Source of the DNA: Sphyrna mokarran | Taxonomy: Eukaryota | Reading direction: 5' to 3' | DNA length: 64,000 bases | NCBI GenBank assembly: GCA_024679065.1 | Contig: JAGIQG010000009.1 | Coordinates: forward strand, 92,132,001-92,196,000 | Part shown: piece after piece, positions 5,886-42,223 of the stretch | How the letters are laid out: the number at the start of each line of letters is the position of its first letter | How positions within the stretch are numbered: the first letter of the stretch is position 1 | Notes under the pieces: generated by a model | Told to the model about the DNA's origin: nothing | The model's input: the letters and a program-made list of their open reading frames with translations, nothing else | Database searches by the model: none | Translations under genes and position numbers: made by a program

Positions 5886-5979
5886 ACGGCAGAGATTCTC
5901 ACTCATCACTTGTGAATGAAGCTTCAAGCTCGCCTTTTGTCACCGAATCCCAATCTTACTCAGTCGGTCGCTGGGAGGA

Positions 5980-6046
5980 ATGGCAGGTGAAGTGCAAGGA
6001 GTGTTTCTGTCGCTTGCGCTGTGTTTCTATCGGGTTCAAACAGTTG
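5980..6046 (+). CDS. MHC class I exon 1 (signal peptide) MAGEVQGVFLSLALCFYRVQTV/G
   Basis: ATG at 5980, hydrophobic core VFLSLALCF, consensus donor G|GTAAGT at 6047 (phase 1). Joins to GG TCT CAT to give the canonical mature N-terminus GSH. Lies in a CpG-rich stretch just downstream of X2/Y boxes. Confidence 0.85.
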
Positions 6047-18000: not shown

Positions 18001-21000
18001 GATCATATTAAGTGTTGGAGCAAGGTTGATGGGCAGAATGGCCTCCTCTTGTTCCATGTTGCTGACAAGTGTTCACATACACAGTAAATTTGACCATGGT
18101 TTCGGGTTTTTAAATGCAGCTTTCCAATAGTGGCTCACAAACGTTCTGATTCCTCAAAGAGGCAGTGCACTTTGCAATATGGCTACATTTTCACACAACA
18201 CTAGCTCAGCTTCAGGTGTCCAGCCTGTTCGGATGAACTGTCAATATCCAAAAATGGGACTTCAGCCTAACCACAGGAGAGACTCATTCCCTCCTCCCCC
18301 CCATCCCCTTCCTTTTGTAGACCCTGCCTTATGATTAATCATTGGAATGCACACTCCAAGTAACTTAATTGTTTGTTTCTTCAGTGAAAAATGAGAGGAA
18401 TTTCCCCGATCCTGAATCACATCCAAATTGCAGATTAGCAAATCCGGAGGAAAGAACACCACGGGGGTTGGGGGGAGAGAGTGTCTATTGAGATCAAATA
18501 CAATGACCGACAAGAGATGAAAGACAGTCTATCTGTCAGATGGAGACAATTTTTGATTTGACTTGACTTATGATGTATGGTACACAGTGAAAAATAATTA
18601 GAGATAACCAAAAGTAATTACAGACAACCCAGGAATGTCACTGAGGAGAGAGGTAGGGTGAGGCTTGATTGATGGAAAGAGGCGATAAAAACTGTAAGTT
18701 AGAGAGACAGAAAAAGGAGCAAGAACAGTGAAAGTCATAGTGAAAGAGAAAACAGAAAAGAAAAATGTAGATAGAGAATGAAACACAAGATGAAGCTATA
18801 TGAAACTTTTCTTTAGGCAGCATTTGGAGTATTACGTGCAGTTCTGATCACCAAACTGTCAGAAGGAAGAAGACTGTTTGGAGAGAGTGCAAAGAAAGTT
18901 CACCAGAGGTCTCGAGGTTATTGGCTCTGACAAGAGGTTGAATAAGCTAAGATTATTTTCACTAGAAATACAAAGGCTTAGTGGTCGTCTGACAGAGGTC
19001 TACAAAATTATGAGAAGCATAGGCAGGATGGATAGTCAAAGGCTTTTTCCAAAGGTAGAGTTGTCAATTCCGAGGAGGCACAGGTTCAAGGTGAGAGAGG
19101 CAAAGTGTAAGGGTGATTTTTTCTCAGAATGGTGGGTGCCTGTAACGTGCTGTCAGAGAAGGTGGTGAAAGCAGGCATATTTAAGAGGCATCTAGGTGGA
19201 TACATGAATTGGGAGGAAATATAGCATACAAACTGATCAATGGACTTCCTTAAGTTTAGGTTTTTTAAACTTAGGCAGGGCGTCATGGTGGAAACAGGCT
19301 TGGAGGGCTGAAAGGCTTTTTCATGTGCTGTAATTTTCTTTATTCTTTGTTTTGTTCTTTCAAGAAAGGGCTAGATCAGGATAGAGAAAGAACAATACAG
19401 AGCAGTAAGAGGAATAGTTTACTTTGGCCTGTTAGGGATGTGGGATTCGTTGGTTAGGTCAGTACTTATCGCCCATCCCTAGTTGCCCTTGAGATAGTGG
19501 TGGTGAGCTGCCTTCTTGAACCACCACAGTCATAGTCATATAGGTGCACCCCAGTGCTATTTGGGATGGATCCCAGAATTTTGACTCAGTAACGGTAGAA
19601 ACAGCAATACATTTCCAAGTGAAGATGGTGAATGATTTTGAGGCGGACATCCAGTTGGCAATGTTCCAACATTTCTGCTGTCTAGATGGTAGAGTCATGG
19701 ATTTAGAAGGTACTGTTGAAGGAGCCTTGGTCAGTTGCTGCAGTAAATCTTTTATATGGTGTACAATGCATTGGTGTTGGAGGATGTGAATGTTTAAGCT
19801 TGCAGTCATGGCTTTTTCAGAACGGCGTTGCACTTGAGTGTTGTTGGAGCTGCACTCATCAAGGCAAGTGGAGAGTATTCTGTTGCTCTCCTGATTTGTG
19901 CCTTGTACAATGGTGGAATGGTTTTTGAAAGCCAGGAGTTGAGTTACTCATCACAGGATTCCTAGCCTCTGATCTGTTCCGGTAGCATCCCACATTCTCA
20001 CAATACATGATATGAACAAGTTATTCCTCAATTGAAATTGAACTGATCTCGTTTCAAATTCTGCATTTATGAAAATCTATTTCATTTAGCTTGAGGACAT
20101 AATTTGCTCTGTAAGGAAATGCAAAAAAAAAGTCTCTTTCAAGGAAAGATTATACTGGTGCTAAGTTCTCTGAGTGCAAGTTCAACAACTAAAACAGGCC
20201 AATCAGCATCATCACATGGATCCTGCTTGACAAAGCAGTCTAATGGCTGACAAAACTACATCATAAAGTAATTCACTAAATTTATGACTGTTCAAAGTTC
20301 TGTTTACAATTGGCATTTACTGTGTCACTTTACAGTTCATTTCCAAGGTACCCTGTTTTATGATTTTTGAGCATAACCTACAGCTAGAAAACTGAAATCC
20401 ATATGTGTAGGGCACAGGCAATCCTCCATATTCCATTGATCTCTAATTCAAATAAATGTAACAATAGTCACTGCTCACTCCATGCCTAAATTATGTTCTC
20501 ACATTAAATAGCCATTCCTCAAAACATTACAGAGTGAGTACATTGCAGGATTGAAACTGACAAAATTCCTATTCTTTTCCAGGGGTTCTCGTGGAGGTAC
20601 CATTGCCCACTCTCTGAAGGATGCAATGCATTGGGTGCAATGTTGTGACATTAGGCTGCTTAGAGACCGTGTTCAGGATATATGTCCCTCTGCAACAATT
20701 GTTTCTTTATTCTGCTGTTAACATGGAATTTGAACCAATGCTTTGTGATATTAATGCTATTGTTGCCACTCTGATTGCCTTTTATTCTATCAGATTTTTA
20801 TTAATTTGTTGACCAATATGATGGGAAGCCATGTTCCTGTCACAATGAGCACAGCAGATTATTGAAGGGGAAGAGAGCCATGTTCCATGAAAGATTAATT
20901 AATTCTAACATGTTGTGGTTCAGGTCAGAAACTCAGAAGTGTTTTATGGAGCCTAGTCATAAGTTTTGCATTTTGAATTTGGTCAGGATAAGCATTACAG

Positions 21001-24000
21001 GTTTCACTTCAGGTATGATTCAAATGACCCATTTATCAAACAAAGTTTATTTCGGAATATTGTTATCATGCACGGAAGGAAAATTAGCAATAGCTTTAAT
21101 CAATTACAAACAAAAACAAAACACCCACAATAATGTATAACCCTCAAAAAATAGGTCTAAGATGTTCCAATGAAAACCAATCCCATAAACGTCCCTTTAA
21201 ACAGATTCAACACAACAAAGACTAATGCTTATGTAATACTGGAATTGTGTCCTTTGGGTGAATTCTGCAGTTCTCTTGACAAACTCAGAATAGTTTGAAG
21301 TCAGAATAACTTCCCAAAACATCAGAGAGAGCAGGTAGTCAAGCCACCAATGTACAATCTTTCCTTCAGGAAGAAAAGATGCATTTCTTTCAGCCAGGGA
21401 GATGGAGAGCCTTTTTTCAGCTTTGTGCTGCTTCTGAAACTAAACACTGCTGTTCAAGACTTAAAAAAGAAAGAGCTACTGTTGCCTGACCTGCAAACAC
21501 ATTTTCCTCTAACAATGCAGGGTCAGAAAACTAATTCCATAGTAAAAATTAATAACCCCATTAAGCCACTTAAGGAGCAATAAAAGGATCTCTCCAGCCA
21601 ACTTGGCATTAATGACATCAGCTGAGAGCAACAGAGAATATGATTAAAAAAACTCTTAAAGGTACACTAACATCACAGACACAAAGCACAGGAATTTAGG
21701 CTAACAACAAGGAAAATCCTTAGCCCATCAGTATCCAGTGGTCCCAGAGGCCTTGGCCCAATTGGGCTTTTTGATTTTTTCAGTTACTTTAAAACTTTGC
21801 TCCTTTGAACCTGTGTTTGCTGGTCACATGGTGGCTATCAGCTTTGCGGTCCTCCTTGGAGACCCTTCAAGGAGATCCAGTTTGGGAACTCCTGCTCAAT
21901 GCTTTGTAATTGTGGGGCAATGCCATAGTAAGTTGACAGAAACTTCCCGTTGCTGAGTGATTAAGTTAAAAGTTGAGTAGATCGATTAGATGATTGAAGT
22001 AATTTATTCAAATCATCTTTATCTTGAAAACAAAAATCAACTTGGAAGTGGATAGAATTTGCTCATTTTGCCATCACCACATTGATGTAAATCGTGAGCA
22101 AAGACATTTTCCTGTTTAAAGTATTTGGGATTGGCCTATCATTTCAAACTCTTTCCCAACTTGTTCCATGAGCTGATGTTCTTAATGTTTGATTTGTCAA
22201 TGAGAATGTTCTCTCTTTTAAAATTTGTCCTAGGGTCTCATTCTCTGCTCTATCAGTACATCCTGAACCATGGGTTTTCGCATCTCCCACAGTGTAGTTT
22301 TATAGGGTTTTTGGATGGCTGCGAGACAGATTATTATGACAACACTCTCAGCATAGCCATTCCAAGGCAAAAATGGTTGGCAGAAGCATTTGACAAGAAT
22401 TTCTGGAAAGAGTTCACCGTAACTATAAAAAGTTTCCACGGAATCATCAAGGAACAGTTTGACACTTGGTTGCAGGAGAACAACCAAACAGCAAGTAAGT
22501 TAATCAATTTTAGGTCAATGGAGGGACTAATGGGCATTTTTATTAACTTTGGGGTTTAGTGAGTCACCCATTATACTACTGGCCTGAATTCCAGTGCGGT
22601 TGATATTCCCACATTCTCGTTTGCTTCTCACGGAATCGCAGAATGGTTATCGTACAGAAGATGGTCCTTTGACCTATCATCTCTGCAATGGATCTCCAAT
22701 TGAGTAACTCATCTCATACCAATGCCCCCGAAATACTTCTCTCCAGAACCCTGCACTTGCTTCCTTTTCAAGATAGTAGTTTCATTCCTCTTTGAATGCT
22801 TCAAGTGAATCCACCTTCACCATACTCTCAGACAGAACATTGCAACACCTAATAACTCACTCCGCAAAAGTATTTCTCCTTGCTTCTTTTATTAATTACA
22901 CTAAATCTGTGTCCTTTCTTTTTGTATCCTTCCATCAGTGAGAAGAGCTTCTCCCTATCTATTCTGTCCAGACCTCTTGTGATTTGGAATTTTCTCTCAA
23001 ACATTTTCCCAGAACAAACTGTTCAAACTTATCCAATTTATCTTCATAATTGAACCTCCTCATCCCTTGAAATATTTTTGTAATACTTTCTGCACCATCT
23101 CAAATGTACTCGAAGTTGGAAGCTGAGGCCAAACTGGTTACATCAGCAAATTTAGGGTAACATCCGATATAATATCCTCCCATCATTAAAACCCAAGGTA
23201 CCATCTGCTTTATTTACTGCTCCTGTGATGGATGGCACAGTGGCACAATAGTTAGTACTGCTGCCTTACAGTGCCAGGGACCCTACTTTGATTCCCAGCT
23301 TTAGTGATTTTCTGTGTATAGTTTTCATGTTCTCCCAGTGTGGGTTTCTTGTGGGTGCTCTGGCTTCCTCCCATGCTTCAAAGTTGTGTGGGTTAATCTT
23401 GATTGACTGTGTTCAATTGACTCTTGAGTGTCAGGGGTATTATCATAGTAAATCCATGGGGTAAAAGCAAAATACTATGGAACCTGAAACCAAAACAGAA
23501 AATGCTGCAAAATCTCAGCAGGTTTGACAGCAACTGTGGAGAGAGAATAGAGCCAATGTTTTGAGTCTGAATGACCCTTCATCAGAACTATTGTCTTTTT
23601 TCAGAACAGTTCTGAGAAAAGGCCATCTAGACATGAAAAGTTGACTCTATTCTCTTTCTACAGAAGCTATCAGAATTACGAAGATTTTTCAGACTTTTCT
23701 AAATACATGGTGTTATGGGGATAGCAGCTGGGTTGTTGTCAGTGTAGCTTCAATGGGCTGAATGGCCTCTGCACTGCACTCCATCTGCACTGTAGGGTAT
23801 ACCATGAATTTAAGAAACCTGCCACTTTCATTACTAAACACCCAGGTCATTCTGATTTTAGTTTACATTGATTTAGTAATGTAATAAGTAAACTTACATT
23901 AACACTGCAATGAAGATACTGTGTAAGTTCCCAAGTTGTCATGCTCTGGCACCTGCCCAGGCATACTGAGGGAGAATTCACCATGGCCACTTCATTTAAC

Positions 24001-27000
24001 CAGGATGACTTTCAGATTGGAGGAGGAAAGTGAAGCACCAGCAGGAAACCCACACAGACATGGGCAGACTCTATATACCAAGCTGGAATTTGAACCCACC
24101 CCCTGGCACTGTGGGCAGCATTGCTAACATAGTACCACTGTGCACTTCTGCACTCCCATTGGAGTGAATCCTTTATCTTACAATGTTTCTCCGTAGTTTT
24201 CCTCTGAAGATGGATCACTTCACACTTATCCCCATTTGTGCTCATCTTTATTTGAATCCTATTCTAGGTAAACTGGACCTGGGGACGGTGTTGTCTTGCG
24301 TAAGACTTTGTGTACCTATTACAGCTTTAGTAACCATCGAAAGACAATGCACATTGAGTGGAAGAGAAATTCTCACATTTGGTGTGAATAAATGCAATAA
24401 ATATTTAAGCATCCATCGACTGAATTGCCGTTTCAGGTATCCATTATATACAAGGACTGTTTGGCTGTGAGGTGAATGGTAGCAAAGCGAGTGGCGGGAT
24501 TTTGAAGCTTGCTTTCGATGGGAGATATGCTTTCAGCTTTGATATAAACACCTTGGTTTGGACTGTGCACGATCCAGTTGCTAAGGAATTAAAAGTGAAG
24601 TGGGATAAAGAGGAAACCATGAACCGTTACTTCAAGAGCCTAATAATAAATGATTGTGTGGCGTTGTGGCAGTTATACTATGCTGTGGGAAACACATTTC
24701 TCAGCAGAAAAGGTAAGTTGAGAACAGCACCATGGTCAGTTACAAGCTGGCTTTTGGAATACAATAGTTGAGGCAATGATTACAAAAACTCATTTGTAAT
24801 GAATGAAGTCATGTTTGAGCTATATAGAACTTTGGTGAGGATGCCACAAGAGTACTGTGTTAGTTCTGGACAGTACATTACAGGAAGGATGTGCTTGCAC
24901 TGGAGGGCATGCAGACGAGATTCACAAGGATGCTGCCTGGGATGGAACATTTAGGTTGTGAAGAGAGGCTGGATAGGCTTGGGTTGTTTTGGGTTATTGG
25001 AGCAGAGAAACTGAGCTGTGACCTGATTGAGGTGTACAAGATTATGAGTGGCTAAGGAGCAGCTATTCTCCTTAGCTGAACAGTAATTCATGAGAGGACA
25101 CAACTTCAAGATGAGGGATAGAAGATTTAATGGGAAGGTGAGGCCAGGGGGTTGTGAGAGTCTGGAATGTACTGCCTGGGAGATTGGGAAAGGTGAGTTT
25201 CTGTACATCCTTTAGAAAATATCTGGATGAGCACATGACATGGTGCAACATTCAAGGCTATGGACCAAGTTATGGTAAATGGGACTAGATGGGAGGTCAG
25301 GTGCTTCACATGAATCAATGCACATTTGATGGGCTGATGTGGCCTCTTCTGCACCCTGTGATTCTATGATTCAATTTCATTGGATCCGTTGGAGACATTC
25401 TCTGTGTTCTTTTAACAGATGGCTGATTCGATGTTGCCTATTTCACATTGGAAGCAAAAAGCTAAGCTTCCCGCTTGATTTCCTAGTGCAATGTTCGGTT
25501 TGCACGTTACTTGAAATTAATTCTCAGTCTCTCATCCAGTTATTCCGCAGGTTTCAGTCACTGCCAGGGAAGGGCCTGGTTGGTTCCTACAATGCGCTGT
25601 GCGTGGATTTCACCCGCAGTCCATTAATGTGACTTGGCTGAAGAATGGATCACAAGTCCCTGAGACCAAATCTACCGGCTTGCTGCCCAATGAAGATGGA
25701 ACCTACCAACTGACTACAACTCTCCAGTTTGACCCGTACGATGGGAAGCAGTATGGCTGTCACATTGAACACATCAGCTTGCCGGATGGGAAGACTGTTC
25801 TTTGGGGTGAGGACATATTTCCTGACATTGTAGTCCAGCATGTGCGGACCCAACCGTTTTCTTTTCGATAAATCACATTATTTCTTTGTCATACAAGCTT
25901 TATCATCAAATAGACAAATCAGGGAGCTGTCCAGTCCCCCAAAATTTTATTGCTTAACGATTTGATGGGGGGGTGGTGGAAGAAACATCGAGTTAGGTAT
26001 GTTCGAGAGCTGAGTTCCTTCTTGGGCAAGATAGTTCTGCAGATTTCATAGGCAGCATAGACTTCACCCTTCATAGTGAGGCCCATGGTTAGCCTGTGGA
26101 ACACTGCACACACCACATGTATTGGTATCCTACTGTCTGCCTCGGACATCTTTTGGTTCTTGGGAACATTATTCTCCACTGTCTGCAATTGGCTGTGAAA
26201 GTAGCTGAAAGGCCCTGCACTCCAAGCCACAATGCTTTGAATCATACTATAGCATTGACCGTCTCATAAGATCATAAGATACAGGAACAGAATTAGGCTG
26301 TTCGGCACATCCCATCTGCTCTGCCTTTCAATCCATGGCTAATAGAGTATTCAATCCCATTCTCTTGCCTTTTGCCTGTAACTTTCATCCTCTCACCATT
26401 TATCTCCATCCCAAATACACTCATTGACAAGTTGCTCATTTTGCTGCATTTTACACACTTCCAGCTTTGTTTCCACCTGTCTGCTTATCAGCTAACTTCA
26501 AAACTGCTGAGAGCTGTCAAGACTTCAAAGTTTCTGCCCAAATTTGTGAACATTTGTTAATACAGATTCATAGAATAGAATCATAGAATTCTATATTGCA
26601 GGAAGTGGCTATTTGATCCAATGAGCCTGCACTGGAAACAATCCCACCCAATCCTTATCCCTGTAACCCCAATATTTACCACGTTAAACCCACTGGCAGT
26701 AAGGGGCAACCCTGGCACTGTGAAGCAGCAGTACCAACCATTGTGTCACTGTGCCGCCGATTGGCAGTGAGCAGGTCACACCTAATGTTATATCATAGCA
26801 CATGGGGATGTTTAGCATGATGTTGAGTGTAAGTTCAGTATTGAACAAAAACAAAGACTGAGCACCCTCCTACATATATTCTTCCCTCTCTTTGTCTTCC
26901 ATGATGTTACTGGGTAACTCATAGTGTGTATGGGGTGTCAGGAAGTGCTATTACCTTTGGTGGGGGAACATGTTGCGTCCTTTCATGGATATTTGTCCAT

Positions 27001-30000: not shown

Positions 30001-33000
30001 ATTGTTCAGCATGATGATTACTGCTATGTTGAATGATGCCTTCCAGGACGTGTTGCTGGAATCAGTCTCAAGTACAGAGTGGATGGGAAGCCCATCACGT
30101 CCATGCTGGTCAACAAAGAACTCACTGCACTACACCCATTTTCCAGCACTTGGCCCAACGCCATTATGGTAGCAAAAGTGAATTTCGAATAACTTGTTAA
30201 ATGTTAGTAGAGTTTCTGACCTAACTGCCCTTTAAGGCAATGAGTTCCTGATTGCCAGCTTTCTCTGTATTTCTCCTCAACTCCCCTCTTCTATTTCTTA
30301 CCTTAAATCCATTCTACTTCTTACCTTACCTCTTTGTTATTGACCCTTCTCCTAATGGAAAAGATACCTCCCTACCTGCCATATCTATGTCCATCATAAT
30401 GTTATATCTCTTTCTGGTTCACTCTGAATCTTCACTGTACTAAGGAAAACAGCACCAGCCTATTCAATCTTTCCTCACAGATCAGACCCTTCAGGCCAGA
30501 CAGCACCCTGGTGAATCTTCTCTGTACCCTCTCCAGTGCAATCACATCCTTCCTATAATGTATCACTTACTCATTCCTATTTTCTCTCTCTGACTTGCTT
30601 ACTCTTTTGCCAGTCGTTTCTTTTCCCTCCTTCCTCTCCTCACAAATCCCAGTTTTTATTCATTGCTCTCAAATTTGGGTCAACAGATGCAGTGGACAAA
30701 AATACTCAATCTCTTGAAGTATTGCACAACAAACCTCATATTACTTTACCATGTTACCACAGAAGTATCAAACTGTAATACAAAACTTTAGCATGCCGGG
30801 CACCTAACTTCATTAGATGCAAATTATTCGACCTCTGCCTTTACTTCATTATGTACAAAAATATCTAGACTCTGACTTACTTGTTAATTTTAAAATAACT
30901 AACTTCTGACCAACTTCATTCTTTACAAAGTATTCAAAGGGTATGAAAACTTAACAAAATATCCAAACTCATGACTTGGACTTAGAAATCCTACGTGAAG
31001 TGAGGCCAACGGATTGGATTCCCCTACTGATGGGCTTTGTTCTGATGTCCCTGAGTCCCAAACTTGGTGTCTTGCTGCTTGTTCAGCAGCGGTTGATCCC
31101 AGGTTGCTGTTGCCAATGTCTCTGAATTTCTTCTTCTCATATAGATGTTGCTGCCACAGACCATTCTTCCAGTAACATATTCACACTAATCAATCACTGT
31201 GTTGTTGGTCATAAGTGCTCAAGTGTTATGCCTCTATCACAGATTATGATTCTCTCAGGAATACAACACACAGGGGCCTATGTTCAATCACTGCCTGTTC
31301 CACACACAACAGCCACAGTCCAATCAATTCCTGTATTTATTCCATAGATGTACACCCTACTCTGCTACTTTCACAGTATTTAGCCTCATATAAAGTTAGC
31401 TCTTTTAACCAGTAGGTTTCACTGATGTTTTCAGTTTGCCTTTATGAATACCCATCAGGCTATATACTCTTCCTCCATGTCCTACCTTTTAAGTACAATA
31501 ATATATGATGAACAAAGTGGATACTATTGACATTAAACCCTCTAACATCATATAACATGAACAGTGTTAGAGGTGTAATATAGGATTGTCTATTTGCATA
31601 GAAAATCATATTTAATAAATTCTTCTTTCAATATATTTCAGAAAGAAAGATGAGGGAAGACAAACACATAGGATTGATTATCGCAGCAGTGGTGGTGATG
31701 CTGGCAGTAATACTGGTAGTCATTGTTCTTGTATATAAAAAATGGAAAAAGCAAAGAGGTAAGGCATGGACAATAATAACAAACAAATTTTGCAAATCAT
31801 CTTTTCTCAGCCAGAAGTGTAATTAAATTTTGAGCTAAAATATCAGTTATGGCGGGGTCAATTATCCCATGGCTTAAATTGCCTAAAAACTGCATTTTCT
31901 TTGAGGAATTAATTCCCAATGGAGGAAGTAATGATAAGCTTACATCTAATCTCAATACTGCCTCTGTTAGAGCACTGTGTGCACTGTTCAGCTTCCCATT
32001 GTAAGGTCTCATTCAGCATTAGGAAAGGTACAGGCCAGATTCATCAAGATGCTGCCTACCTAAGGTGTGCACTGTCTTGAGTAGTGGGTGTCCCAATAAT
32101 GAAGGCTATCCAGACTCTTTAAGCTATTAAGACAAGAATGATACAACTTGAGAGAACAATTCTGCCAATATTTACAGGAATAGTTCCAGCCATGAGAAAT
32201 TTCAGGTAGGAGGATAGTTTGGAGAGGATGGAAATGTTTTCCTTGGAGATGAGAAGGCAAAAAGCAAATATTCAAAACTATCAAATAATAGAATCACAGA
32301 AAGGATGTAGCACATAAGGGGGTCTTTCAATCCATCTGGTCTACAGTGACCCAAAAGACAGGTGTCCTTTCTAATCCCATCTTCATGCAGGAGGAGCGTG
32401 TTTAGAATAGAAAGGGCAAAACTGATTCCATTCCTATCAGGATCAAAACTTAATATAATTTAGAGTGATAGTGATAGAGTCATAGAGGTTTGCAGCACTG
32501 AAACAGGTCCCTCAGTCCAACTTGCCCATGCTGCCCTTTTTATTAACTCCTAAGCTAGTTCCAACTGCTCATGTTTGCCCATATCCCTCTGTACCCATCT
32601 TACCCATGTGACTGTCTGAACGCTTTTTAAAAGACAAAGTTTTACCCACTTCTACTAGTATCTCTGGCGGCTTGTTCCAGACACTTACCATTCTCTGTGA
32701 AAAAATTGCTGCTCTGGACCCTTTCATCTCACCTTAAAACTATGACCTCTCACCTTAAATCTATGACCTCTAGTTTTAGACTCCCTCCTTTTGGAAAAAG
32801 ATATTGACTATTTACTTGAAATATACCCCTCATTATTTGATAGATCTCTGTAAGATCACTCCTAAGCCTCCTATGCTCCAGAGAAAAAATGATCCAGTCA
32901 ATCCAACCTCTCCTTATAATTCAAACTATCAAGTCCCAGTAGCAACCTAGTAAATCTTTCCTGCACTCTTTCTAGTTAAATAATATCCTTTCCATAATAG

Positions 33001-36000
33001 GGTGACCAGAACTATATACAGTATTCCAAGTATGGCCTTACCAATATCTTGTACAATTTCAACAAGACATCCCAACTCGTGTATTTAATGTTCTGACCAG
33101 TGAAACCAAGCATGCTGAATGCCTTTTTTACCACTCTGTCCATCTGTGACTCCACTTTCAAGGAGCTGTGAACCTGTACCCTTAGACCTCTTTGTTCTGT
33201 TACCCTCTCCAATGCCCTACTATTAACAGAATAAGTCCTACCCTGCTTTCAATGTACCAAAATCCATCATCTTGCATTTATCTAAATTAAATTCCATCTG
33301 CATTTGTCAGCCCCTGGCCTGATTGATCAAGATCCCATTGCAATCCCAGATAACATCCTTCACTGTTCACTATGCCACCAATCTTAGTGTCATCTGCAAA
33401 CTTACTAGCCACTTGTACTAAATTGTCATCCAAATCATTAATATAAATGACAAATAACAGTGAACCCAACACTAAGGCTGTAGGCCTTCAGTTTGAAAAA
33501 CAACCCCCTACAATCACTCTCTATCTTCTATCATCAAGTCAATTTTGTATCTATTTAGCTACCTCACTCTGGACCCTGTGATATTTAACTTTATGCAACA
33601 ACCCACCAGTTGGTACTTATAAAAGGCCTTGCTAAAGTCCATGTAGACAACATCAAATGCACTGCCCTCTTGGTTACCCCTTCAAAAAACTCAATCAAAT
33701 TTGTGAGAAATGATTTTCCACTCACAAAACCATGCTGACTGTTCCTAATCAGTCTCTGCATCTCTAAATACCTGTAGATTCTATCTTTCAAAATACCTTT
33801 TGACAACTTACTCACAACAGATGTGAGGCTCACCGGCCTGTAATACTCAAGCTTTTCCCTCAAACAAAGGCACAGTATTTTCCATCTTCCAATCTTCAGG
33901 CACCTCACCTGTGACTATTGATGATTCAATTATCTCTGCTGGGGGAGGTACAATTTCGTCCCTAGCCTCTCACTGTATCCTGGGATACATTCGTCGGGCA
34001 TTGGGGATTTATTGATCTTGATATGTTTTAAGACTTCCAGTACCTCCTTCTCTGTCATATGTATACGCCTCAAGACATCACTATTTATTTCCCGAAGTTC
34101 TCTAAGATCCATGCTTTTCTCAACACTGAATACTGGTGAGAAATATTCATTTAGGATCTCACCCATCTCTTGTGGGTTTGCAGAAGAAGCAAGTATAACA
34201 TCAGAAAAGAAACTTTATCACACAGAAAGGTTGGGGTCTGGAATACACTGCCTGGAAATGCAGTGGAGCCAGGTTCATTTGTAACATTCAAGATGGCATT
34301 AGATGATTACCTGAGGTCCAAAGATCAGGAGAATGGAACTAAGTCATGATGCTCATTTGGAGAGCCTTTGCAGACACGATGGACTGAATGATCTCCTTCT
34401 ACACCGTAAAAGTTCAGTGATTTAGGGTTAGATTGGTCAAGATGATGAGGGAAAAGGGAGTGAAGGGAATTTTGGATCAGGGCAGGTCAATTAGGAATAT
34501 TTGTTCACCTGATGAAGACATGGCTGTGCAATCTGAATGGGCTGAAGAACTTGTATCCTATGTTTTAAGCGGGTGTTTTGAAATCTTTGTGGCTTGTTTA
34601 TAGTGACTCTGGATTAGAATTTTCTTTCAATGGATTTTGGATGTGGAGTATGTCATGGTGAATAACACAACATACTCACTGAGGGATCTGTTGTTCTAGT
34701 TTATCAGCCGACCCAGACAGAAGCAGGAAAATCTGTAAAAGAGGCTGTTGGGGAGTGGCATGGGGGAATTTCAGTATTTAATGATAGTGTAAGATGAATG
34801 ATATTTTTTCACTGGCTGTCTTTAGTACATCTCAGCCAGCTACCTTTTTGTGACTATTAGGGCAGGTATGTACAGGGGAACCAACAGAGGGGGCGAGATG
34901 AGCTGGGGTGGGGGTGTTGGGGGAGCATGTAAAGAGCAAAGAACAAAGTGCAGTACAGCACAGGAAAAGGACCTTTGGGCCTCCAAGCCTGCACCAATTA
35001 TATCCCATCTAGACCAACCGCTTATATTTCTCTATTCCTGTCTGTTTATGTGTGTATCCAGATAAATTTTAAATATCACTAACATATCTGCCTCAATCAC
35101 CTCAATTGCTAATGCATTTCAGGTCCCCACCACTCTCTATGTAAAAAAATGTCCCCTCACACATCTCCACTGAACCTTTCCCCCCTTATCTTTAACTTGT
35201 ACTCCTTTGTAATTGTTATTTCTGCCCTGGGAAAAAGCTTCCAACTGTTCATCCGATCCATTCTCCTCATAATTTTGTAAAATTCTATCAGGCCGCCCCT
35301 CAGCCTCCGTCTTTCCAGGGAGAACAATCCCAGTTCATTCAATCTCTCCTCGTTATGAATACACTTCGTACCAGGCGCCATTCTGGTAAAACATTTTCTG
35401 TATTCTCTCCAAAGCCTCCATGTCCTTCTGTAATGTGATGACCAGAATTGGACACAATATTCCAAAAGTGGCCTAACAATGTTTTATATAACTGTAACAT
35501 AATTCGCTAACTTTTGTATTCAATGCTCTGTCCAATGAAGACAAGCGTGCCACATGCTTTCTTCACCACCTTTTCCACCCATGCTGCCACTTTTAAGGAT
35601 TTGTGGACATGTATTCCCAGATCCCTCTGTGAGGCTGGGGCAAAGCACAAATTGTGGTGCGTGTGCGTGTGTGCGGTGGGCAGAGGGATGGGGGAGGTGT
35701 GGGAAGGCTGGAGAGAAAGATATTATGTTAGAGGGTGTCTTTGATACACACAAGGCACTTCTGAATGATGTGCTTCCCTTCCTTAGCGACCTATCAATAA
35801 TTATTTGAACTAACAACTTCCTTAATTTCACTAGCCTATCTAGGCAATAGGCTGTGTTGCCTTTTGATTTGTTAACAAGATAATTGCTGGTGGACTTATT
35901 TTCAAATATCGGTGGCTGGACTGTTGATTTTGGCATCTGCCTGCCTTTGCAGAAACATTGGCACATACTTACTTGATGGTGGTGTGGCCTAATGGATAAG

Positions 36001-39000: not shown

Positions 39001-39866
39001 GTGTCTGAGCCCAACCACATTCTCTATTGAAATCTATTGGCGGGATAGCAGCCAAATGGGTGGGCGCTTCCAGAACTAGGGGCCATAGCTTGAGGTTAAG
39101 GGATAAACCCTTTTTAGAACTGAAGTGAGAAGACATTTCTTCACCCAGAAGGTGGTGAATATGTGAAATTCACTACCACAGAATATAGTGAGATCAAAAC
39201 ATTGTCTGATTTCAAGAAGTTAGATATAGTTCTAGGATCGAAACGAATCATGAGATGTGGAAGGGTTGACGGGGTCAAGGGTTGGGGAGAGGGAGATCAG
39301 GATATTGAATTTGATGATCCACTATGATCAAGACTAATGGCCAAGTAGGCTTGAAGGACCAAATGGCATAGTCCTACTTCTAGTTCCTATGTTTTTATTT
39401 GCAAATTGCACTTTGCATGGAGACACAAGTGTTCCAAATGATGATTGACATTGAGTTTGATGGCACGGATAATGGAATTGGGAAGAGCATGGTTTCTGGT
39501 AGTGGTGGGAAGAATTATGATCAACATTGCTGAGTACCAGCTTGTTCACAAGTATGCTTCCACCTCAGGGTGTTAGCTGACAGAGTCTTCACAGGCATTA
39601 TGATCATCTACGTTTCAGTTATCCCCATTTGGTACGATCTTAGACATATCCTCACAGAAGAATGTGCTAAACTGATCATGCTTGATTGAATTGACTAAAA
39701 GATTGGGAAGTAACCATTTTGGTAATCACAGTTGACTAAAAAGCTAGTTCACTGAATCATCATAAAATGGAAATAGACATGACTGTATTCATTACACTGC
39801 TCCGTGCAATCACCCTTATATTGTCTAACACTTATTTTTCATTTTCTAGAGTACCATGGTGTCTAA
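5980..39866 (+). CDS. Non-classical MHC class I heavy chain, 6 coding exons: join(5980..6046,22234..22494,24437..24712,25540..25806,31642..31758,39850..39866), 334 aa
   Basis: All five introns are GT-AG and phase 1, as in MHC class I genes. Exon lengths 67+261+276+267+117+17 = 1005 nt give an uninterrupted frame: leader, alpha1 (GSHSL..NQT), alpha2 (C101-C164 pair), alpha3 (C1-set Ig), TM and short tail. The lineage cannot be assigned without a search. The last exon is the least certain. Confidence 0.9.
7590..7905 (+). mobile_element. HE1-like V-SINE
   Basis: tRNA-like head (agtgattagcaatgctgcct…gggttcagttc), V core and CR1-like tail. Confidence 0.75.
7905..8435 (-). mobile_element. CR1 3' fragment
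   Basis: Minus ORF HSLRIQDRPFRMDIRRNFLTQR..LCNSLP. Confidence 0.75.
9730..11370. mobile_element. Cluster of degraded CR1 3' fragments (mixed orientation)
   Basis: [19 protein letters not shown]-type remnants on both strands. Confidence 0.7.
12352..12543 (+). pseudogene. C-terminal fragment of CR1 ORF1p (SGNH esterase-like)
   Basis: NETLQLNAWMRDWCRAEGFIFIDHWEVFRREGHLFTRDREQLTGRGTHILAGRLAGVFQKCLN* aligns with the ORF1 at 43172-43714 ([20 protein letters not shown]…[15 protein letters not shown]). Confidence 0.85.
12531..15437 (+). CDS. CR1 ORF2p: APE endonuclease + reverse transcriptase (968 aa)
   Basis: Uninterrupted ORF. APE motifs NARS, VTETW, GDFN, SDH. RT motifs [25 protein letters not shown]. 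Confidence 0.95.
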   Translation: MFKLIGREGGETAGTGSGIERDDRVTPEGRKEYPRAEGLQCMCFNARSVTGKTDELKAIMFTRSLDVVAVTETWLKEGQDWQLNIPGYKCFRCDRVGVKRGGGVALLVKDNIIAVQRERGMDDLGIESLWVELRNRKGVVTLLGVYYRPPNSPQAAEEGICRDILDKCRKNRVVVVGDFNFPGVDWSVPRAVGVDGEEFVQCVLEGSLEQYVDGPTREGAILDLVLGNEPGQVVDVEVGEQVSNSDHNSVCFRILMEKDETGPKGRVFNWGRARYGQIRQDLKDTDWDKLFEGRSTRYMWESFKGKLNSLQERYVPARRKDGKGRIREPWLTREIEDLIKKKREAYIRSRQLGTEIALEAYRDCRRDLKRGIRKAKRGHEVALAGRIKENPKAFYTYVRSKRMVRGKIGPLRDRGGDLCLEPEGMGEILNEYFASVFTQETGQMSVPDVDKVEDWLREIRITRKEVLGLLGSLKTYKAPGPDGIYPRLLRELREDLAGPLTQIFVSSLDTGEVPEDWRIANVVPFFKKGQRDHPGNYRPVSLTSVIGKLMERILRDRMYEHLERCDLIRDTQHGFVKGKSCLTNLVEFFEEVTKTVDEGQAVDVVYMDFSKAFDKVPHGRLIEKVKAHGIQGRVCRWVENWLGRRRQRVVVEGSFSDWKPVTSGVPQGSVLGPLLFVVYINDLEVGVGGEISKFADDTKMLGLAGTEEQCQAIQQDIDRLVDWADRWQMEFNPEKCEVMHFGRKNVEENYRIKGKTIRSIETQRDLGVQVHKSLKVSSQVEKVTKKAYSMLAFIEKGIEYKSRSLMLQLYTTLVRPHLEYCAQFWSPYYRKDVESLERVQRRFTRMLPGMEGLSYEERLDRLGLFSLERRRLRGDLIEVYKIIRGIDRVNGGKLFPPLEMDRTRGHGHRVRGAMYRTNIRGQFFTQRVVGVWNALPSKVVGAGTLGLFKGLLDSHMSGMQIEGYIRTV
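16617..17641 (+). mobile_element. Penelope-like element remnant (GIY-YIG end) with inverted pseudo-LTRs, TSD AGGTAT
   Basis: Arms 16659-16934 and 17365-17641 are reverse complements. The interior encodes a degenerate GIY-YIG C-terminus (…YIG.T.QTL…RRVAEQRLIAKFHT…LNRDLGF). AGGTAT at 16611-16616 and 17642-17647 splits a minus-strand SINE. Confidence 0.85.
17557..17592 (+). ncRNA. Minimal hammerhead-ribozyme-like motif in Penelope pLTR
   Basis: TCAC-CTGACGA-A-GAGG(GAAA)CCTC-GAAA-ACTT-GTGA: core boxes CUGANGA and GAAA, stem II hairpin, stem I TCAC/GTGA. Confidence 0.55.
18760..19360 (+). mobile_element. CR1 3' fragment
   Basis: ERVQRKFTR…LFSLE..RL.G.LTEVYKIM and a CR1 tail. Confidence 0.75.
22234..22494 (+). 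CDS. MHC class I exon 2 (alpha1 domain)
   Basis: Acceptor tttgtcctag|GG, donor A|GTAAGT. Translation GSHSLLYQYILNHGFSHLPQCSFIGFLDGCETDYYDNTLSIAIPRQKWLAEAFDKNFWKEFTVTIKSFHGIIKEQFDTWLQENNQTA contains the class I hallmarks GSHSL, G26/D29, PR..W51, W60 and the N86 sequon. Confidence 0.95.
23232..23800 (+). mobile_element. HE1-like V-SINE split by a palindromic insertion (23463-23700)
   Basis: tRNA head ggcacagtggcacaatagttagtactgctgcc and V core; the SINE resumes at 23701. Confidence 0.7.
23463..23700. mobile_element. Short palindromic non-autonomous element (probably Penelope-derived) with 13-bp TSD
   Basis: The two halves are imperfect reverse complements. Flanks aaatccatggggt (23450-23462) and aaatacatggtgt (23701-23713). 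Related half-copies occur near 6400-6510, 16240-16310 and 55860-55985. Confidence 0.6.
24437..24712 (+). CDS. MHC class I exon 3 (alpha2 domain)
   Basis: Acceptor gtttcag|GT, donor G|GTAAGT. Translation SIHYIQGLFGCEVNGSKASGGILKLAFDGRYAFSFDINTLVWTVHDPVAKELKVKWDKEETMNRYFKSLIINDCVALWQLYYAVGNTFLSRK shows H93, Q96, GC101, DG, W133, KW147, C164 and Y171. Confidence 0.95.
24800..25370 (+). mobile_element. Degraded CR1 3' fragment in MHC intron 3
   Basis: ORF2-end remnants and tail gatgggctga…cctcttctgcaccctgtgattctatgatt. Confidence 0.7.
25540..25806 (+). CDS. MHC class I exon 4 (alpha3, C1-set Ig domain)
   Basis: Acceptor ctcatccag|TT, donor G|GTGAGG. Translation VIPQVSVTAREGPGWFLQCAVRGFHPQSINVTWLKNGSQVPETKSTGLLPNEDGTYQLTTTLQFDPYDGKQYGCHIEHISLPDGKTVLW contains C..GFHP..I.VTW, LPNEDGTYQ and Y.C.IEH.SL motifs. 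Confidence 0.95.
27600..30090 (+). mobile_element. RTE-clade LINE (BovB-like), degenerate APE + RT
   Basis: Motifs RPERRTALVARE.ARYNID..VLSETRL, ISVYAPT, LGDFNAR, HWHLID, CGADC..D.RL, HDWFDEND, FVDL.KAFDTV, KQ.CVLAPTLF. Multiple stops and frameshifts. Confidence 0.88.
29563..29736 (-). mobile_element. Short CR1 3' end inserted into the RTE element, TSD GTATCA
   Basis: (tagaaca)n tail in reverse. GTATCA at 29557-29562 and 29737-29742; removing the insert restores RTE RQCQEKYQEQNHELYTTFVDL. Confidence 0.85.
31642..31758 (+). CDS. MHC class I exon 5 (connecting peptide/transmembrane)
   Basis: Acceptor atatttcag|AA, donor G|GTAAGG. Translation ERKMREDKHIGLIIAAVVVMLAVILVVIVLVYKKWKKQR has a 22-residue hydrophobic helix followed by a basic stop-transfer cluster. 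Confidence 0.92.
32470..34175 (-). mobile_element. Degraded CR1 LINE (RT region to 3' end)
   Basis: Minus ORFs [42 protein letters not shown]. Confidence 0.85.
34940..35630 (-). mobile_element. CR1 3' fragment
   Basis: Minus ORF EYCVQFWS…[13 protein letters not shown]. Confidence 0.8.
36576..39305 (+). repeat. Local direct duplication of about 470 bp (36576-37045 and 38830-39305)
   Basis: Both copies read aggta.agtgagtgg..gatgaaaatcc…gaaatgggaaaaaaaagtgtctgtccaactctgtttccattaacacaag…ggga.atcaggatat. Confidence 0.9.
37925..38235 (+). mobile_element. Full-length HE1-like V-SINE
   Basis: Head ggcacagtggt..acactgctgcctcacagtgccagggac..aggttc, V core, tail gctcgatgggccgaatagcctcct…gattctatgatt. 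Confidence 0.85.
39850..39866 (+). CDS. MHC class I terminal coding exon (cytoplasmic tail EYHGV*)
   Basis: Strong acceptor: branch point CTAAC (39825-39829), long pyrimidine tract, TTCTAG|. In phase 1 it reads (G)AG TAC CAT GGT GTC TAA. It is followed by non-repetitive AT-rich 3' UTR-like DNA with ATTAAA at 40126-40131. Confidence 0.7.
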
Positions 39867-41318: not shown

Positions 41319-42223
41319 TTACACACTGTGTTTAACATCTTTTTTTTTAATAATTAGAGTTACTGGATATTTAAACAGGTTCTTTAATACCTCTCTGAAT
41401 TTAGTCTGGGACACTGCATAAATAATGGTATTTGAGCAGGAACTTAAATGCTGCAGCATATATCCTGTTTGCTCCATAATGGTGAAAGGATTACTATAGT
41501 CTGTGTGTAAGTATTGAATTTCCATAATCTGTACACAGATATAATGAACAAAAGTTACCGACCATAATAGTATAAAGCTGCCAGATATGGCCAACAGTAA
41601 AACAATGGATTTTTTTCGGTTTTCCATTTCCGGGTCGTTATCACTGTTCCGCAGACTTCTTCTAACCTTGCTTGTGAGCACAATGTGCCTGATGGTCAAG
41701 CCATTGAGTATCAGAATCAAGAGGAAGGGAATAAAAGGCATTAGAACAATGTCAACCCACAAGAATGTAACCCATATAGGTTCTGTATAGAGGCTTAACT
41801 TTACATTGCAGAACCATAATACATTGTTGATTATTATGTGAGGTTCAAATGTAAAATAAATTGGGATGTTTTCCAGAATACTCAGCCCACATATTATCGC
41901 TACAACCACTCCCGCAGTTTTTTCAGTGCAATATTGTGTTCTTAATTTTTGCCAACAAATGGCAACAAATCGGTCAAAGGTGAAAGCTACGGTTAGCCAG
42001 ACGGAACATTCAATAGAAGCAAAAATTAAGAAGAAATTCAGGCTGCAGACAGGAGTGATGTCCAGGAAGGAATCTGGAAAATAGATTTCATTCATCTCGT
42101 ATAGGATCACGTCAACAATCAGGACAAGTAGATCTGTCGCTGCCATGGAAACCAAGTAAACAGTGATGCATTTGGAGAGGCCACATTTCCCCCGGGAAAG
42201 GATCACAATGGTTAAAAGGTTAG
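41319..42223 (-). CDS. GPR139/142-like GPCR exon 2 (TM1 end to TM7 and C-tail)
   Basis: Lies within ORF 41319..42326. The true start is the acceptor (minus strand ...gcaatttcag|CT AAC CTT) at 42223. The ORF-track N-terminus MHEEKVQ… is intronic. Confidence 0.92.

What the first reader, a model, noticed from the sequence alone, without database searches (positions are those of the whole stretch)
5980..39866. Complete, intact non-classical MHC class I gene hidden across 34 kb of transposon-filled introns
Seen: six exons, all joined in phase 1, giving a 334-aa protein with no stop or frameshift. The ORF track shows only fragments and misses the TM and tail exons. The leader is 16 kb from alpha1. 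No TAP, PSMB, class II or second class I gene is visible in the window. Inference: a functional class Ib gene combining a hydrophobic groove, four N-glycan sequons, no acidic CD8 loop and a YxxΦ tail, which together give a CD1-like profile. Established: several non-classical class I lineages are described in cartilaginous fish. I cannot tell whether this gene belongs to one of them or is new.
Basis: partly seen in the sequence, partly recalled or inferred. Interest (0 to 1): 0.85.

Follow-up and report, generated by a model that had tools for sequence, protein, structure and literature searches.

The report
Shark UGA non-classical class I gene
This is a real, intact and transcribed shark MHC class I-like gene spread over 34 kb, but it belongs to the already named UGA lineage, a lipid-binding CD1-like family whose crystal structure is public, so it is a good annotation rather than a discovery.

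Summary
The six-exon model is correct. Exons 5980-6046, 22234-22494, 24437-24712, 25540-25806, 31642-31758 and 39850-39866 all have AG/GT borders and phase 1, and sum to 1005 nt (334 codons plus stop). Contigs of one public run match the exons with no differences. They join exon 3 to exon 4 exactly at 24712|25540 and leave the genome exactly at the exon 2 acceptor and the exon 4 donor. The leader, TM and tail exons rest on homology only: the leader matches the Mustelus asterias orthologue at 21 of 22 residues, the TM motif is shared, and the tail EYHGV* matches EYNAV*.

All three ectodomain exons hit PDB 9CH4 best (E 4e-33 to 1e-39). Its title is "shark nonclassical MHC class I, UGA". Domain trees place the gene beside Mustelus inside a lineage found only in elasmobranchs (18 clusters, 13 species). 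Four of eight classical peptide-end anchors are lost.

The gene is not a CD1 family member by sequence or fold ranking. It is a new member of a known kind.

Extras: a longer alpha1 branch than in Mustelus, a decayed alpha3 fragment in intron 1, and a conserved GPR139-like neighbour.

The parts
5980..6046 (+). Exon 1: start codon and signal peptide (22 codons plus 1 nt), donor G|gtaagt
   Evidence: Sequence. 21 of 22 residues identical to the leader of Mustelus asterias P0171; tblastn E 6e-8. The RNA contig carries 59 letters upstream of exon 2 that do not lie anywhere in 20300-22232. The junction itself was not seen.
22234..22494 (+). Exon 2: alpha1 domain
   Evidence: PDB 9ch4_A E 4.4e-33. 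A 310-nt contig with 0 differences starts matching at 22233. Sister to Mustelus, support 99/95.
24437..24712 (+). Exon 3: alpha2 domain, with the canonical Cys pair at exon residues 10 and 73
   Evidence: Pfam MHC_I E 3.7e-10; 9ch4_A E 2.1e-34; spliced contig joint 24712|25540.
25540..25806 (+). Exon 4: alpha3 C1-set Ig domain. The acceptor in use is the first of three nearby AGs (the others end at 25550 and 25557).
   Evidence: C1-set E 4.4e-19; 9ch4_A E 1.2e-39 with the same length as the solved chain. The contig joint fixes 25540, and the contig leaves the genome at 25806.
31642..31758 (+). Exon 5: connecting peptide, transmembrane helix and basic stop-transfer residues
   Evidence: The only strongly hydrophobic 19-mer in frame between 25820 and 41000. 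tblastn to P0171 E 1.7e-5. The motif D-K-H-I-G-L-I is shared with orthologues. No read evidence.
39850..39866 (+). Exon 6: 17-nt micro-exon that completes the split E codon, then encodes YHGV and the stop (Y-x-x-V tail)
   Evidence: Orthologue tails: EYNAV, DYNTV, DYNVV, GYNVI, AYNAV in sharks, and D/A-Y-x-x-I in rays, 9 of 12 rows of A1. The pattern AG+2 nt+Tyr+2 codons+Val/Ile+stop occurs once in the 9.56 kb after exon 5, against 0.17 expected from shuffles. It has a strong pyrimidine tract. No read evidence.
20809..20874 (+). Decayed fragment of an alpha3 exon inside intron 1, with a stop just upstream
   Evidence: blastn: 74% identity over 66 nt to exon 4 nt 190-255, E 2e-6. Lineage HMM E 7.6e-4. 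tblastn with 5 lineage proteins, E 8.6e-4 to 8e-3.
41319..42326 (-). Neighbouring intronless GPR139-like 7TM receptor gene, tail-to-tail with the class I gene. It is a conserved neighbour, not part of the gene.
   Evidence: Pfam 7tm_1 E 6.8e-23. 58% identity over 293 aa to Leucoraja erinacea 'probable G-protein coupled receptor 139' P0151. In skate this receptor is joined to the UGA-type gene in NCBI models.

Best explanation
This is this shark's orthologue of UGA, a single- or low-copy, MHC-linked non-classical class I lineage of sharks and rays.

Shown here: an intact six-exon gene, transcribed and correctly spliced at least from exon 2 to exon 4. It encodes a type I membrane glycoprotein with a leader, alpha1/alpha2 groove domains, a conserved C1-set alpha3 domain, one TM helix and a five-residue tail ending in Y-x-x-V.

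Inferred: the heavy chain pairs with beta2-microglobulin through alpha3. Its groove has lost four of the eight residues that hold peptide ends and binds lipid instead, as reported for the lineage. The tyrosine tail routes it through endosomes for loading, as in CD1b-d. It then shows lipid to T cells of limited diversity. In short, it works like CD1 without being a CD1 family member.
For: Gene model and splicing.

Lineage:
- All three ectodomain exons hit 9ch4_A best. The next hits are far weaker: 8gm8_A at 4.8e-9 for alpha1 and 7cpo_A at 5.7e-12 for alpha2.
- The 9CH4 entry title is 'Crystal structure of shark nonclassical MHC CLASS I, UGA'.
- Stegostoma P0168 matches 9ch4_A at E 6.7e-170, so the protein family found here is the lineage of the solved chain.
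- Against 1.84 billion representatives, the alpha2 exon has only 3 hits at E<=1e-30 (66-70% identity), then drops to 39%.
- 18 of 2108 candidates pass E<=1e-20, and all are elasmobranch.
- The gene is sister to Mustelus in the alpha1 (99/95), alpha2 (87/79) and alpha3 (98/95) trees.

Anchors, from alignments to shark UAA 6lup_A and Anolis 7cpo_A: the equivalents of Y7, K146, W147 and Y171 are kept. The Y59 equivalent is F, R84 is E, T143 is L and Y159 is L.

Tail conservation.

Literature: UFA is called CD1-like and mapped in an MHC-Ib cluster (passage of PMC10751288). UFA and UGA are called lipid binders (passage of PMC12562908).
Against: Lipid binding, beta2m pairing, endosomal routing and T-cell recognition were not tested here. 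For the lineage they rest on a personal communication quoted in a review.

Exon 1, the TM exon and the 17-nt tail exon have no read support. A read-through of the exon 5 donor would also give an open tail of 22 residues.

Three of 12 orthologue models lack the Y-x-x-V/I tail.

The alpha1 domain sits on a branch four times longer than in Mustelus and has changed residues that are conserved in 17 of 18 relatives. This could mean relaxed constraint.

Run X1 is only guessed to be RNA, and its tissue and individual are hidden.

MHC linkage rests on unchecked notes of this scan.
Confidence: 0.85

Rival explanations
1. The gene is a UGA copy on its way to becoming a pseudogene. It is still transcribed and open, but its groove domains are drifting under relaxed constraint.
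For: End branches, this gene versus Mustelus: alpha1 0.37 versus 0.087; alpha2 0.25 versus 0.14.

Unique changes in alpha1: 14 versus 4 with Scyliorhinus as outgroup (p 0.03).

Changes at columns conserved in 17 of 18 relatives: Y20C, M38L and Y56F in alpha1, and E70I in alpha2.

A decayed alpha3 fragment in intron 1 shows past decay at this locus.
Against: There is no stop or frameshift in 1005 nt, and all ten splice sites are canonical.

Spliced contigs carry no differences.

Alpha3 is 82 of 88 identical to Mustelus, with no rate excess (1 versus 2 unique changes). Neutral decay would not spare one domain.

The rate excess is not robust to the outgroup: 12 versus 6 (p 0.24) and 12 versus 4 (p 0.08) for alpha1, and p 0.14 to 0.81 for alpha2.
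Confidence: 0.07
2. It is a recent paralogue of the true UGA orthologue. The other copy would lie nearby, for example the hydrophobic-groove class I noted 68 kb upstream. This copy would have taken on a changed ligand or receptor specificity.
For: Identity to Mustelus is 71% in alpha1 and 74% in alpha2, but 93% in alpha3 and 95% in the leader.

Pristiophorus and Pristis each have three UGA-type copies.

The alpha3 relic in intron 1 is evidence of past duplication.

Note s1-886792 reports another such gene 68 kb upstream (unchecked).
Against: All three domain trees put it beside Mustelus, in a topology that otherwise broadly follows shark and ray relationships.

In skate, the gene next to the UGA-type gene is a distinct sister lineage (P0033, about 36% identical). 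The upstream gene may therefore be that lineage rather than a second UGA.

Confidence: 0.06
3. It is a new non-classical lineage, or a true CD1 or MR1 orthologue, rather than UGA.
For: Source names for relatives include 'MR1-like'. There are weak Pfam MHC_I_3 (CD1-type) matches in 10 of 12 lineage members. The tail is a Y-x-x-V motif.
Against: The gene sits inside the 9CH4/UGA clade with starred support.

MHC_I_3 scores are below the cut-off: 14.4 bits for the alpha2 exon and 22.5 bits for P0171, against 35.

No CD1 chain is among the 45 PDB sequences that match alpha1 at E<=1.

No CD1 entry is in the top 50 structural matches of the orthologue model, which are UGA, then chicken BF2, shark UAA, YF1*7.1, ZAG and MR1.
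Confidence: 0.02

Closest known systems
Shark non-classical MHC class I UGA (PDB 9CH4, released 2026-03-18; most likely from an orectolobiform shark)
   Same: It is the best hit of every ectodomain exon (E 4e-33, 2e-34, 1e-39). Identity is roughly 60-70%, counted by eye from the printed alignments. The alpha3 length is the same, as are the Cys pairs and the motifs around P-R-Q-x-W and M-N-R-Y-F-K. The two fall in the same clade in the trees through Stegostoma P0168.
   Different: It comes from a different species, and alpha1/alpha2 are more diverged than expected from alpha3. This gene has F at the Y59-equivalent, an extra Cys at alpha1 residue 20, and I for a lineage-wide E in the alpha2 helix. 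The solved chain stops before the TM, so the tail cannot be compared.
Mustelus asterias 'class I histocompatibility antigen, F10 alpha chain-like' (P0171, 330 aa), the nearest protein on record
   Same: Leader 21/22, alpha1 61/86, alpha2 67/91, alpha3 82/88, TM 22/38. The tail is EYNAV against EYHGV.
   Different: This gene's TM is a few residues longer, and its alpha1 branch is about four times longer.
UFA and the unnamed sister lineage next to UGA in skate (P0033; PDB 8GM8 may be related)
   Same: P0033 groups with the UGA clade (98/97 in alpha1). It lies on the same 127-kb Leucoraja contig as a UGA-type gene, under the next accession number. The alpha1 exon's second PDB hit is 8gm8_A.
   Different: Identity is only about 36%. 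Which of these is UFA is not known to me: I never saw the title of 8GM8, and no paper in the library describes it.
CD1 (mammals, birds, reptiles)
   Same: The function reported for the lineage is lipid binding (passage of PMC12562908). The tail is a short tyrosine-based Y-x-x-hydrophobic motif, the peptide anchors are lost, and the alpha1 helix region is more hydrophobic than in shark UAA (16 versus 10 of 39 residues, counted by eye).
   Different: It is not a family member by sequence or fold ranking. It is MHC-linked according to the literature and the scan's notes.
Classical shark class I UAA (PDB 6LUP)
   Same: The same fold, exon plan and phase 1 introns, and the same N-glycan site at the end of alpha1.
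   Different: Only 4 of 8 peptide-end anchors are kept. Alpha1 similarity is weak (E 4.4e-7).
Chicken YF1*7.1 (PDB 3P73 and 9EB2-9EB6), a class I-type lipid presenter
   Same: It ranks among the closer solved relatives of alpha2 (E 1e-9) and of the orthologue model (Z 25.1-25.6). It is a class I-type molecule that presents acylated ligands, according to the entry titles.
   Different: About 30% identity, an avian lineage and no orthology implied.

Membership tests
Elasmobranch UGA lineage (PDB 9CH4) | Each ectodomain domain is most similar to UGA and falls inside the UGA clade | tested here: met
   9ch4_A is the top hit for alpha1, alpha2 and alpha3. The title names UGA. The clade is starred in alpha1 (98/97 with P0033 as sister). 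This gene is sister to Mustelus in all three trees.
Elasmobranch UGA lineage (PDB 9CH4) | Short cytoplasmic tail with Y-x-x-V/I encoded after the TM exon | tested here: met
   EYHGV-stop at 39850-39866. 9 of 12 aligned orthologues carry the motif. The pattern is unique in the 9.56 kb downstream of exon 5. Use of this exon in RNA was not seen.
Elasmobranch UGA lineage (PDB 9CH4) | MHC linkage, single or low copy | tested here: inconclusive
   There is one copy in the 64-kb window plus one alpha3 relic. [quoted passage not shown] The GPR139-like neighbour is shared with skate.
Elasmobranch UGA lineage (PDB 9CH4) | Binds lipid in the groove | not testable with these tools
   Only a literature statement for the lineage (PMC12562908 passage). 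The ligands of 9CH4 are not visible to the tools.
Classical MHC class Ia (UAA type) | Eight conserved residues that hold the peptide termini (numbering recalled: 7, 59, 84, 143, 146, 147, 159, 171) | tested here: not met
   4 of 8 are kept. F, E, L and L replace the equivalents of Y59, R84, T143 and Y159, in alignments to 6lup_A and 7cpo_A.
CD1 | Alpha1/alpha2 matches the CD1-type domain model (Pfam MHC_I_3) above its cut-off, or CD1 chains are among the nearest solved relatives | tested here: not met
   14.4 bits (alpha2 exon) and 22.5 bits (P0171) against a cut-off of 35. There is no CD1 among the 45 PDB matches of alpha1, and none in the top 50 of either structural search. CD1 chains do match the alpha3 Ig domain, as all class I-type chains do.
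CD1 | Tyrosine-based endosomal sorting tail (a functional trait of CD1b, c and d; recalled) | tested here: met
   The Y-H-G-V C-terminus is present in the sequence. Trafficking itself was not tested.
MR1 | Nearest relatives are MR1, with the ligand-binding lysine in alpha1 (recalled) | tested here: inconclusive
   MR1 chains match alpha1 only at E 6e-4 to 0.04, well below UGA. I did not see a residue-level alignment to MR1, so the lysine was not checked.

The most novel reading that the evidence does not exclude
In this species UGA has shifted function. Its ligand-binding alpha1 domain, and to a lesser degree alpha2, evolved several times faster than in its nearest relative, while alpha3, the leader and the tail stayed fixed.

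The changes replace a tyrosine kept in 17 of 18 relatives (the Y59 equivalent) with Phe, replace a lineage-wide Glu on the alpha2 helix with Ile, and add an unpaired Cys to alpha1. This would mean a lineage-specific retuning of an ancient lipid presenter towards a new ligand class or a new receptor.

It may follow a local duplication. The alpha3 relic in intron 1 would be the trace of that duplication, which would also explain the 16-kb first intron.
Probability: 0.15. Interest if true: 0.5.

Novelty: new member of a known kind. Interest (0 to 1): 0.3.

Why it matters
UGA and UFA are the evidence that lipid presentation by class I-type molecules goes back to the earliest jawed vertebrates. A correct gene model in one more shark adds to that comparative set. 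The model includes a leader 16 kb upstream and a 17-nt tail exon that ordinary gene callers miss.

No protein closer than the Mustelus one was found in the protein collections (best alpha2-exon identity 70%), so the gene may be missing from those sets.

The conserved Y-x-x-V/I tail in 9 of 12 aligned orthologues supports endosomal loading as an old trait. The conserved GPR139-like neighbour gives a synteny marker for finding UGA in other genomes.

The faster groove evolution seen here is a modest lead on how such molecules retune. None of this changes what is already known about the lineage.

Tried and rejected
Acceptor of exon 4. My first pick (25551, later 25558) broke the phase or shortened the A strand. 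Alignment to 9ch4_A and the RNA joint fixed it at 25540.

Papers. Searches for the PDB ids 9CH4 and 8GM8 found nothing relevant (18 chance hits, 0 hits). Four further searches found no primary paper on UFA or UGA. They returned only passages in PMC10751288 and PMC12562908. That a primary paper is absent from this library says nothing about subscription journals. Supplements were closed and I did not ask for them. The supplementary tables of PMC10751288 may list these genes by species.

Protein searches. The search for homologous proteins with the alpha1 exon found no candidate. This is a length-window effect and means nothing. A second full-length search with P0171 returned the same 18 proteins.

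Structure. The first prediction, from 12 sequences, was poor (pLDDT 54.3) and was not searched. The second, from 60 sequences, was good (pLDDT 88.8). It models the Mustelus orthologue, not this gene.

Rows left out.
- Trees: I excluded the isoforms, fusion models and GPCR rows P0003, P0151-P0153, P0155, P0158-P0163 and P0178-P0180, and all domain hits covering under 85% of the model.
- The alpha2 and alpha3 trees used 26 of 186 and 25 of 106 domain hits, namely the lineage plus a few outgroups that I chose.
- Alignment A1 held 12 of the 18 lineage proteins.

Full report
THE OBSERVATION

- Exon 1, 5980-6046: ATG, a 22-codon signal peptide plus one base, donor G|gtaagt.
- Exon 2, 22234-22494: alpha1.
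- Exon 3, 24437-24712: alpha2.
- Exon 4, 25540-25806: alpha3.
- Exon 5, 31642-31758: connecting peptide, transmembrane helix and basic residues.
- Exon 6, 39850-39866: seventeen bases that complete the split E codon and encode YHGV and TAA.

All acceptors end in AG after pyrimidine tracts, all donors begin with GT, and every intron is in phase 1. Everything below was done exon by exon, and 334 is arithmetic. The introns measure 16187, 1942, 827, 5835 and 8091 nt.

Pfam calls the alpha2 exon MHC_I (E 3.7e-10), the alpha1 exon MHC_I weakly (E 0.004, below the cut-off), and the alpha3 exon C1-set (E 4.4e-19).

The four N-glycan sequons are present: NQT in alpha1, NGS in alpha2, NVT and NGS in alpha3. 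Each extracellular domain has two cysteines, those of alpha2 and alpha3 at the canonical spacing.

TRANSCRIPTION AND SPLICING

One public run (X1, coded, year 2017, kind guessed as RNA) holds 16% of the sampled words of 22000-26000. The three exons make up about 20% of that stretch.

I laid it on 20300-26200:
- The exon bins have depth about 4.5 to 8 (about 7 in most). The unique intron bins 20300-20890, 21679-22072, 22664-22860, 24240-24436 and 25816-26200 have depth 0.
- A 310-letter contig matches 22233-22483 without a difference, starting at its own letter 60. It therefore leaves the genome at the exon 2 acceptor. Its first 59 letters lie nowhere in the 1.9 kb upstream.
- A 539-letter contig matches 24507-24710 and 25538-25806 without a difference. 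It skips 827 letters with GT..AG ends (cut +2), which is exactly 24712|25540. It carries 66 more letters beyond 25806.

So the gene is transcribed, the exon 3-4 splice is proven, and the exon 2 acceptor and exon 4 donor are supported. The run cannot be ordinary genomic DNA of this animal, because unique introns are empty.

There are three AGs within 18 bases at the exon 4 acceptor. The contig uses the first, which is the only one that keeps both the frame and the usual alpha3 length.

THE EXONS WITHOUT READS

These rest on homology. The nearest protein on record is P0171 of Mustelus asterias. It shares 21 of 22 leader residues, 61/86 in alpha1, 67/91 in alpha2, 82/88 in alpha3 and 22/38 in the TM exon.

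The stretch D-K-H-I-G-L-I at the start of the TM exon recurs in orthologues from sharks and rays.

Nine of the twelve orthologues aligned in A1 carry Y-x-x-V/I after the TM:
- Five sharks end there: EYNAV, DYNTV, DYNVV, GYNVI and AYNAV.
- Four rays have D/A-Y-x-x-I followed by eight more residues.
- Three models (Chiloscyllium, Heptranchias and one Pristiophorus copy) lack it.

The pattern acceptor AG, two bases, Tyr, two codons, Val/Ile, stop occurs once in the 9.56 kb between exon 5 and the next gene. Mononucleotide shuffles give 0.17 on average, and the whole window has 2 on each strand. The micro-exon is therefore well supported but not proven. A read-through of the exon 5 donor would also stay open for 22 codons.

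WHAT IT IS

Each ectodomain exon hits PDB chain 9ch4_A far better than anything else:
- alpha1: E 4.4e-33, next 8gm8_A at 4.8e-9.
- alpha2: E 2.1e-34, next 7cpo_A at 5.7e-12.
- alpha3 with its true start: E 1.2e-39.

Both structural searches print the title of 9CH4: 'Crystal structure of shark nonclassical MHC CLASS I, UGA', released 2026-03-18. Stegostoma tigrinum P0168 matches that chain at E 6.7e-170 over its whole length, so the solved molecule belongs to the family found here.

Against 1.84 billion representatives, the alpha2 exon has 264 hits at E<=0.001 but only 3 at E<=1e-30 (66-70% identity). The next hit has 39% identity.

A full-length search with one of these found 18 of 2108 candidates at E<=1e-20. 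All are from 13 elasmobranch species, sharks and rays. The sources name them only 'F10 alpha chain-like', 'MR1-like', 'hypothetical' or 'Ig-like domain-containing'. A skate cluster adds Amblyraja. No protein closer than the Mustelus one was found.

Trees. Maximum-likelihood trees by domain put this gene beside Mustelus every time: alpha1 99/95, alpha2 87/79 and alpha3 98/95. That pair lies with Scyliorhinus and Cetorhinus (alpha1 96/90). The whole lineage plus one skate sister (P0033) is starred at 98/97 in alpha1 and 96/91 in alpha2. The rest of the topology broadly follows shark and ray relationships. This fits an old orthologous lineage. Row choices are given under Tried and rejected.

NON-CLASSICAL AND CD1-LIKE, BUT NOT CD1

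Anchors. In ungapped HMMER alignments to shark classical UAA (6lup_A) and to Anolis class I (7cpo_A), the equivalents of Y7, K146, W147 and Y171 are kept. The Y59 equivalent is F, R84 is E, T143 is L and Y159 is L. That is four of eight kept. The numbering is recalled from the classical literature.

Hydrophobicity. The alpha1 helix region has 16 hydrophobic residues of 39, against 10 of 39 in 6lup_A (my count by eye).

CD8 loop. The alpha3 loop that is acidic in classical mammalian molecules has one Glu and one Lys here (sequence; the comparison is recalled).

Literature. One passage of PMC10751288 says UFA is CD1-like in its binding region and maps in an MHC-Ib cluster with UDA and UEA. One passage of PMC12562908 says UFA and UGA are CD1-like, MHC-linked and single or low copy. 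It says crystal structure and mass spectrometry suggest they bind lipids like those of human CD1d, and cites a personal communication. I saw only those passages and the abstracts.

Membership of the CD1 family fails its tests:
- The CD1-type Pfam model scores 14.4 bits (alpha2 exon) and 22.5 bits (P0171) against a cut-off of 35. MHC_I passes in 12 of 12 lineage members.
- No CD1 chain is among the 45 PDB sequences matching alpha1.
- In both structural searches with a good model of the Mustelus orthologue (pLDDT 88.8), the rows after UGA (Z 29.3) are chicken BF2, duck, shark UAA, YF1*7.1, ZAG and MR1 at Z about 25-27. No CD1 is in the top 50.

So the gene works like CD1, on the literature's word, but it is a class I-type lineage of its own.

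SURROUNDINGS

Second class I gene. A lineage HMM run on all six frames, and tblastn with nine proteins, find no second class I gene in the window. They do find a decayed alpha3 fragment at 20809-20874 in intron 1. It is 74% identical in DNA to exon 4 nt 190-255 (E 2e-6), with a stop just before it. It is a trace of an old local duplication. No alpha1 or alpha2 relic was detectable.

GPCR neighbour. An intronless 335-codon 7TM gene on the minus strand (41319-42326; 7tm_1 E 6.8e-23) lies 1.4 kb beyond the stop codon. It is 58% identical to skate 'probable GPR139'. In Leucoraja, NCBI models even join the UGA-type gene to that receptor on one strand. The neighbour is therefore conserved, but the orientation differs.

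Sister lineage in skate. The next accession after a UGA-type gene, on the same 127-kb contig, is P0033. It is a sister lineage about 36% identical.

Scan notes (unchecked). These place a classical class I promoter 6.3 Mb away, class II beta genes 1.7-2.0 Mb away, a non-classical cluster 683 kb away and another hydrophobic-groove class I 68 kb upstream, all on the same piece. That fits MHC linkage, but I could not verify it.

Transposons. The introns do hold them: an open 968-codon LINE ORF2 with endonuclease and RT domains at 12531-15437, an endonuclease fragment at 28005-28478, and a weak RT fragment at 33591-33908 on the minus strand. Five other ORFs tested gave no Pfam match.

A MODEST ODDITY

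The end branch of this gene is 0.37 in alpha1 against 0.087 for Mustelus, 0.25 against 0.14 in alpha2, and 0.055 against 0.03 in alpha3.

Unique changes, this gene versus Mustelus:
- alpha1: 14 versus 4 with Scyliorhinus as outgroup (p 0.03), 12 versus 6 with Cetorhinus (p 0.24), 12 versus 4 with Heterodontus (p 0.08).
- alpha2: 12 versus 5, 12 versus 7 and 10 versus 8 (p 0.14 to 0.81).
- alpha3: 1 versus 2.

Columns kept in 17 of 18 relatives are changed here at Y20C, M38L and Y56F (alpha1), E70I (alpha2) and S79I (alpha3). Y25H in alpha3 is shared with Mustelus.

The excess is confined to the groove domains but is statistically weak. It may reflect retuning, relaxed constraint or paralogy. 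I could not run codon tests because the orthologue's DNA was out of reach.

VERDICT

The open question is answered: this is the UGA gene of this shark. It is a new member of a known, structurally solved lineage, not a new kind.

Noticed in passing
window 20809-20874 (+): A decayed fragment of an alpha3 exon lies in intron 1, 1.36 kb upstream of the alpha1 exon. It is 74% identical in DNA over 66 nt to exon 4 and is preceded by a stop. It is a trace of an old local duplication. No alpha1 or alpha2 relic was found.
   Followed up: partly
window 41319-42326 (-): An intact intronless GPR139-like 7TM gene lies tail-to-tail 1.4 kb beyond the class I stop codon. It is 58% identical to the skate receptor that sits next to the skate UGA-type gene, so the neighbourhood is conserved. 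The orientation is opposite to the skate fusion models.
   Followed up: partly
window 12531-15437 (+): An open 968-codon LINE ORF2 with endonuclease and reverse-transcriptase domains sits in intron 1, on the same strand as the gene. It may belong to a young, still active element. A scan note (s1-887054) proposes a frameshift site at its start, which I did not test.
   Followed up: no
window 25540-25558 (+): Three AG dinucleotides lie within 18 bases at the exon 4 acceptor. The RNA contig uses the first. Use of the acceptor at 25551 would shift the frame, and use of the one at 25558 would shorten the first strand of alpha3.
   Followed up: partly
window 5850-5890 (+): An inverted CCAAT (ATTGG) lies at -99 and a TGACG element at -125 from the ATG. 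The spacing recalls the X2-Y part of MHC promoters. This motif reading is recalled, not tested.
   Followed up: no
Leucoraja erinacea proteins P0152, P0153, P0155, P0178 (no locus held): NCBI isoform models join the skate UGA-type class I exons to the downstream GPR139-like receptor in one reading frame. These are either read-through transcripts or annotation artefacts.
   Followed up: no
Leucoraja erinacea P0033 and Mobula birostris P0009 (no locus held): A sister lineage about 36% identical to UGA lies next to the UGA-type gene in skate and is tandemly doubled in the manta ray model. It may be UFA or an unnamed lineage. Its best solved relative is also 9CH4 (E 2.9e-60), not 8GM8 (E 2.8e-32).
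   Followed up: partly
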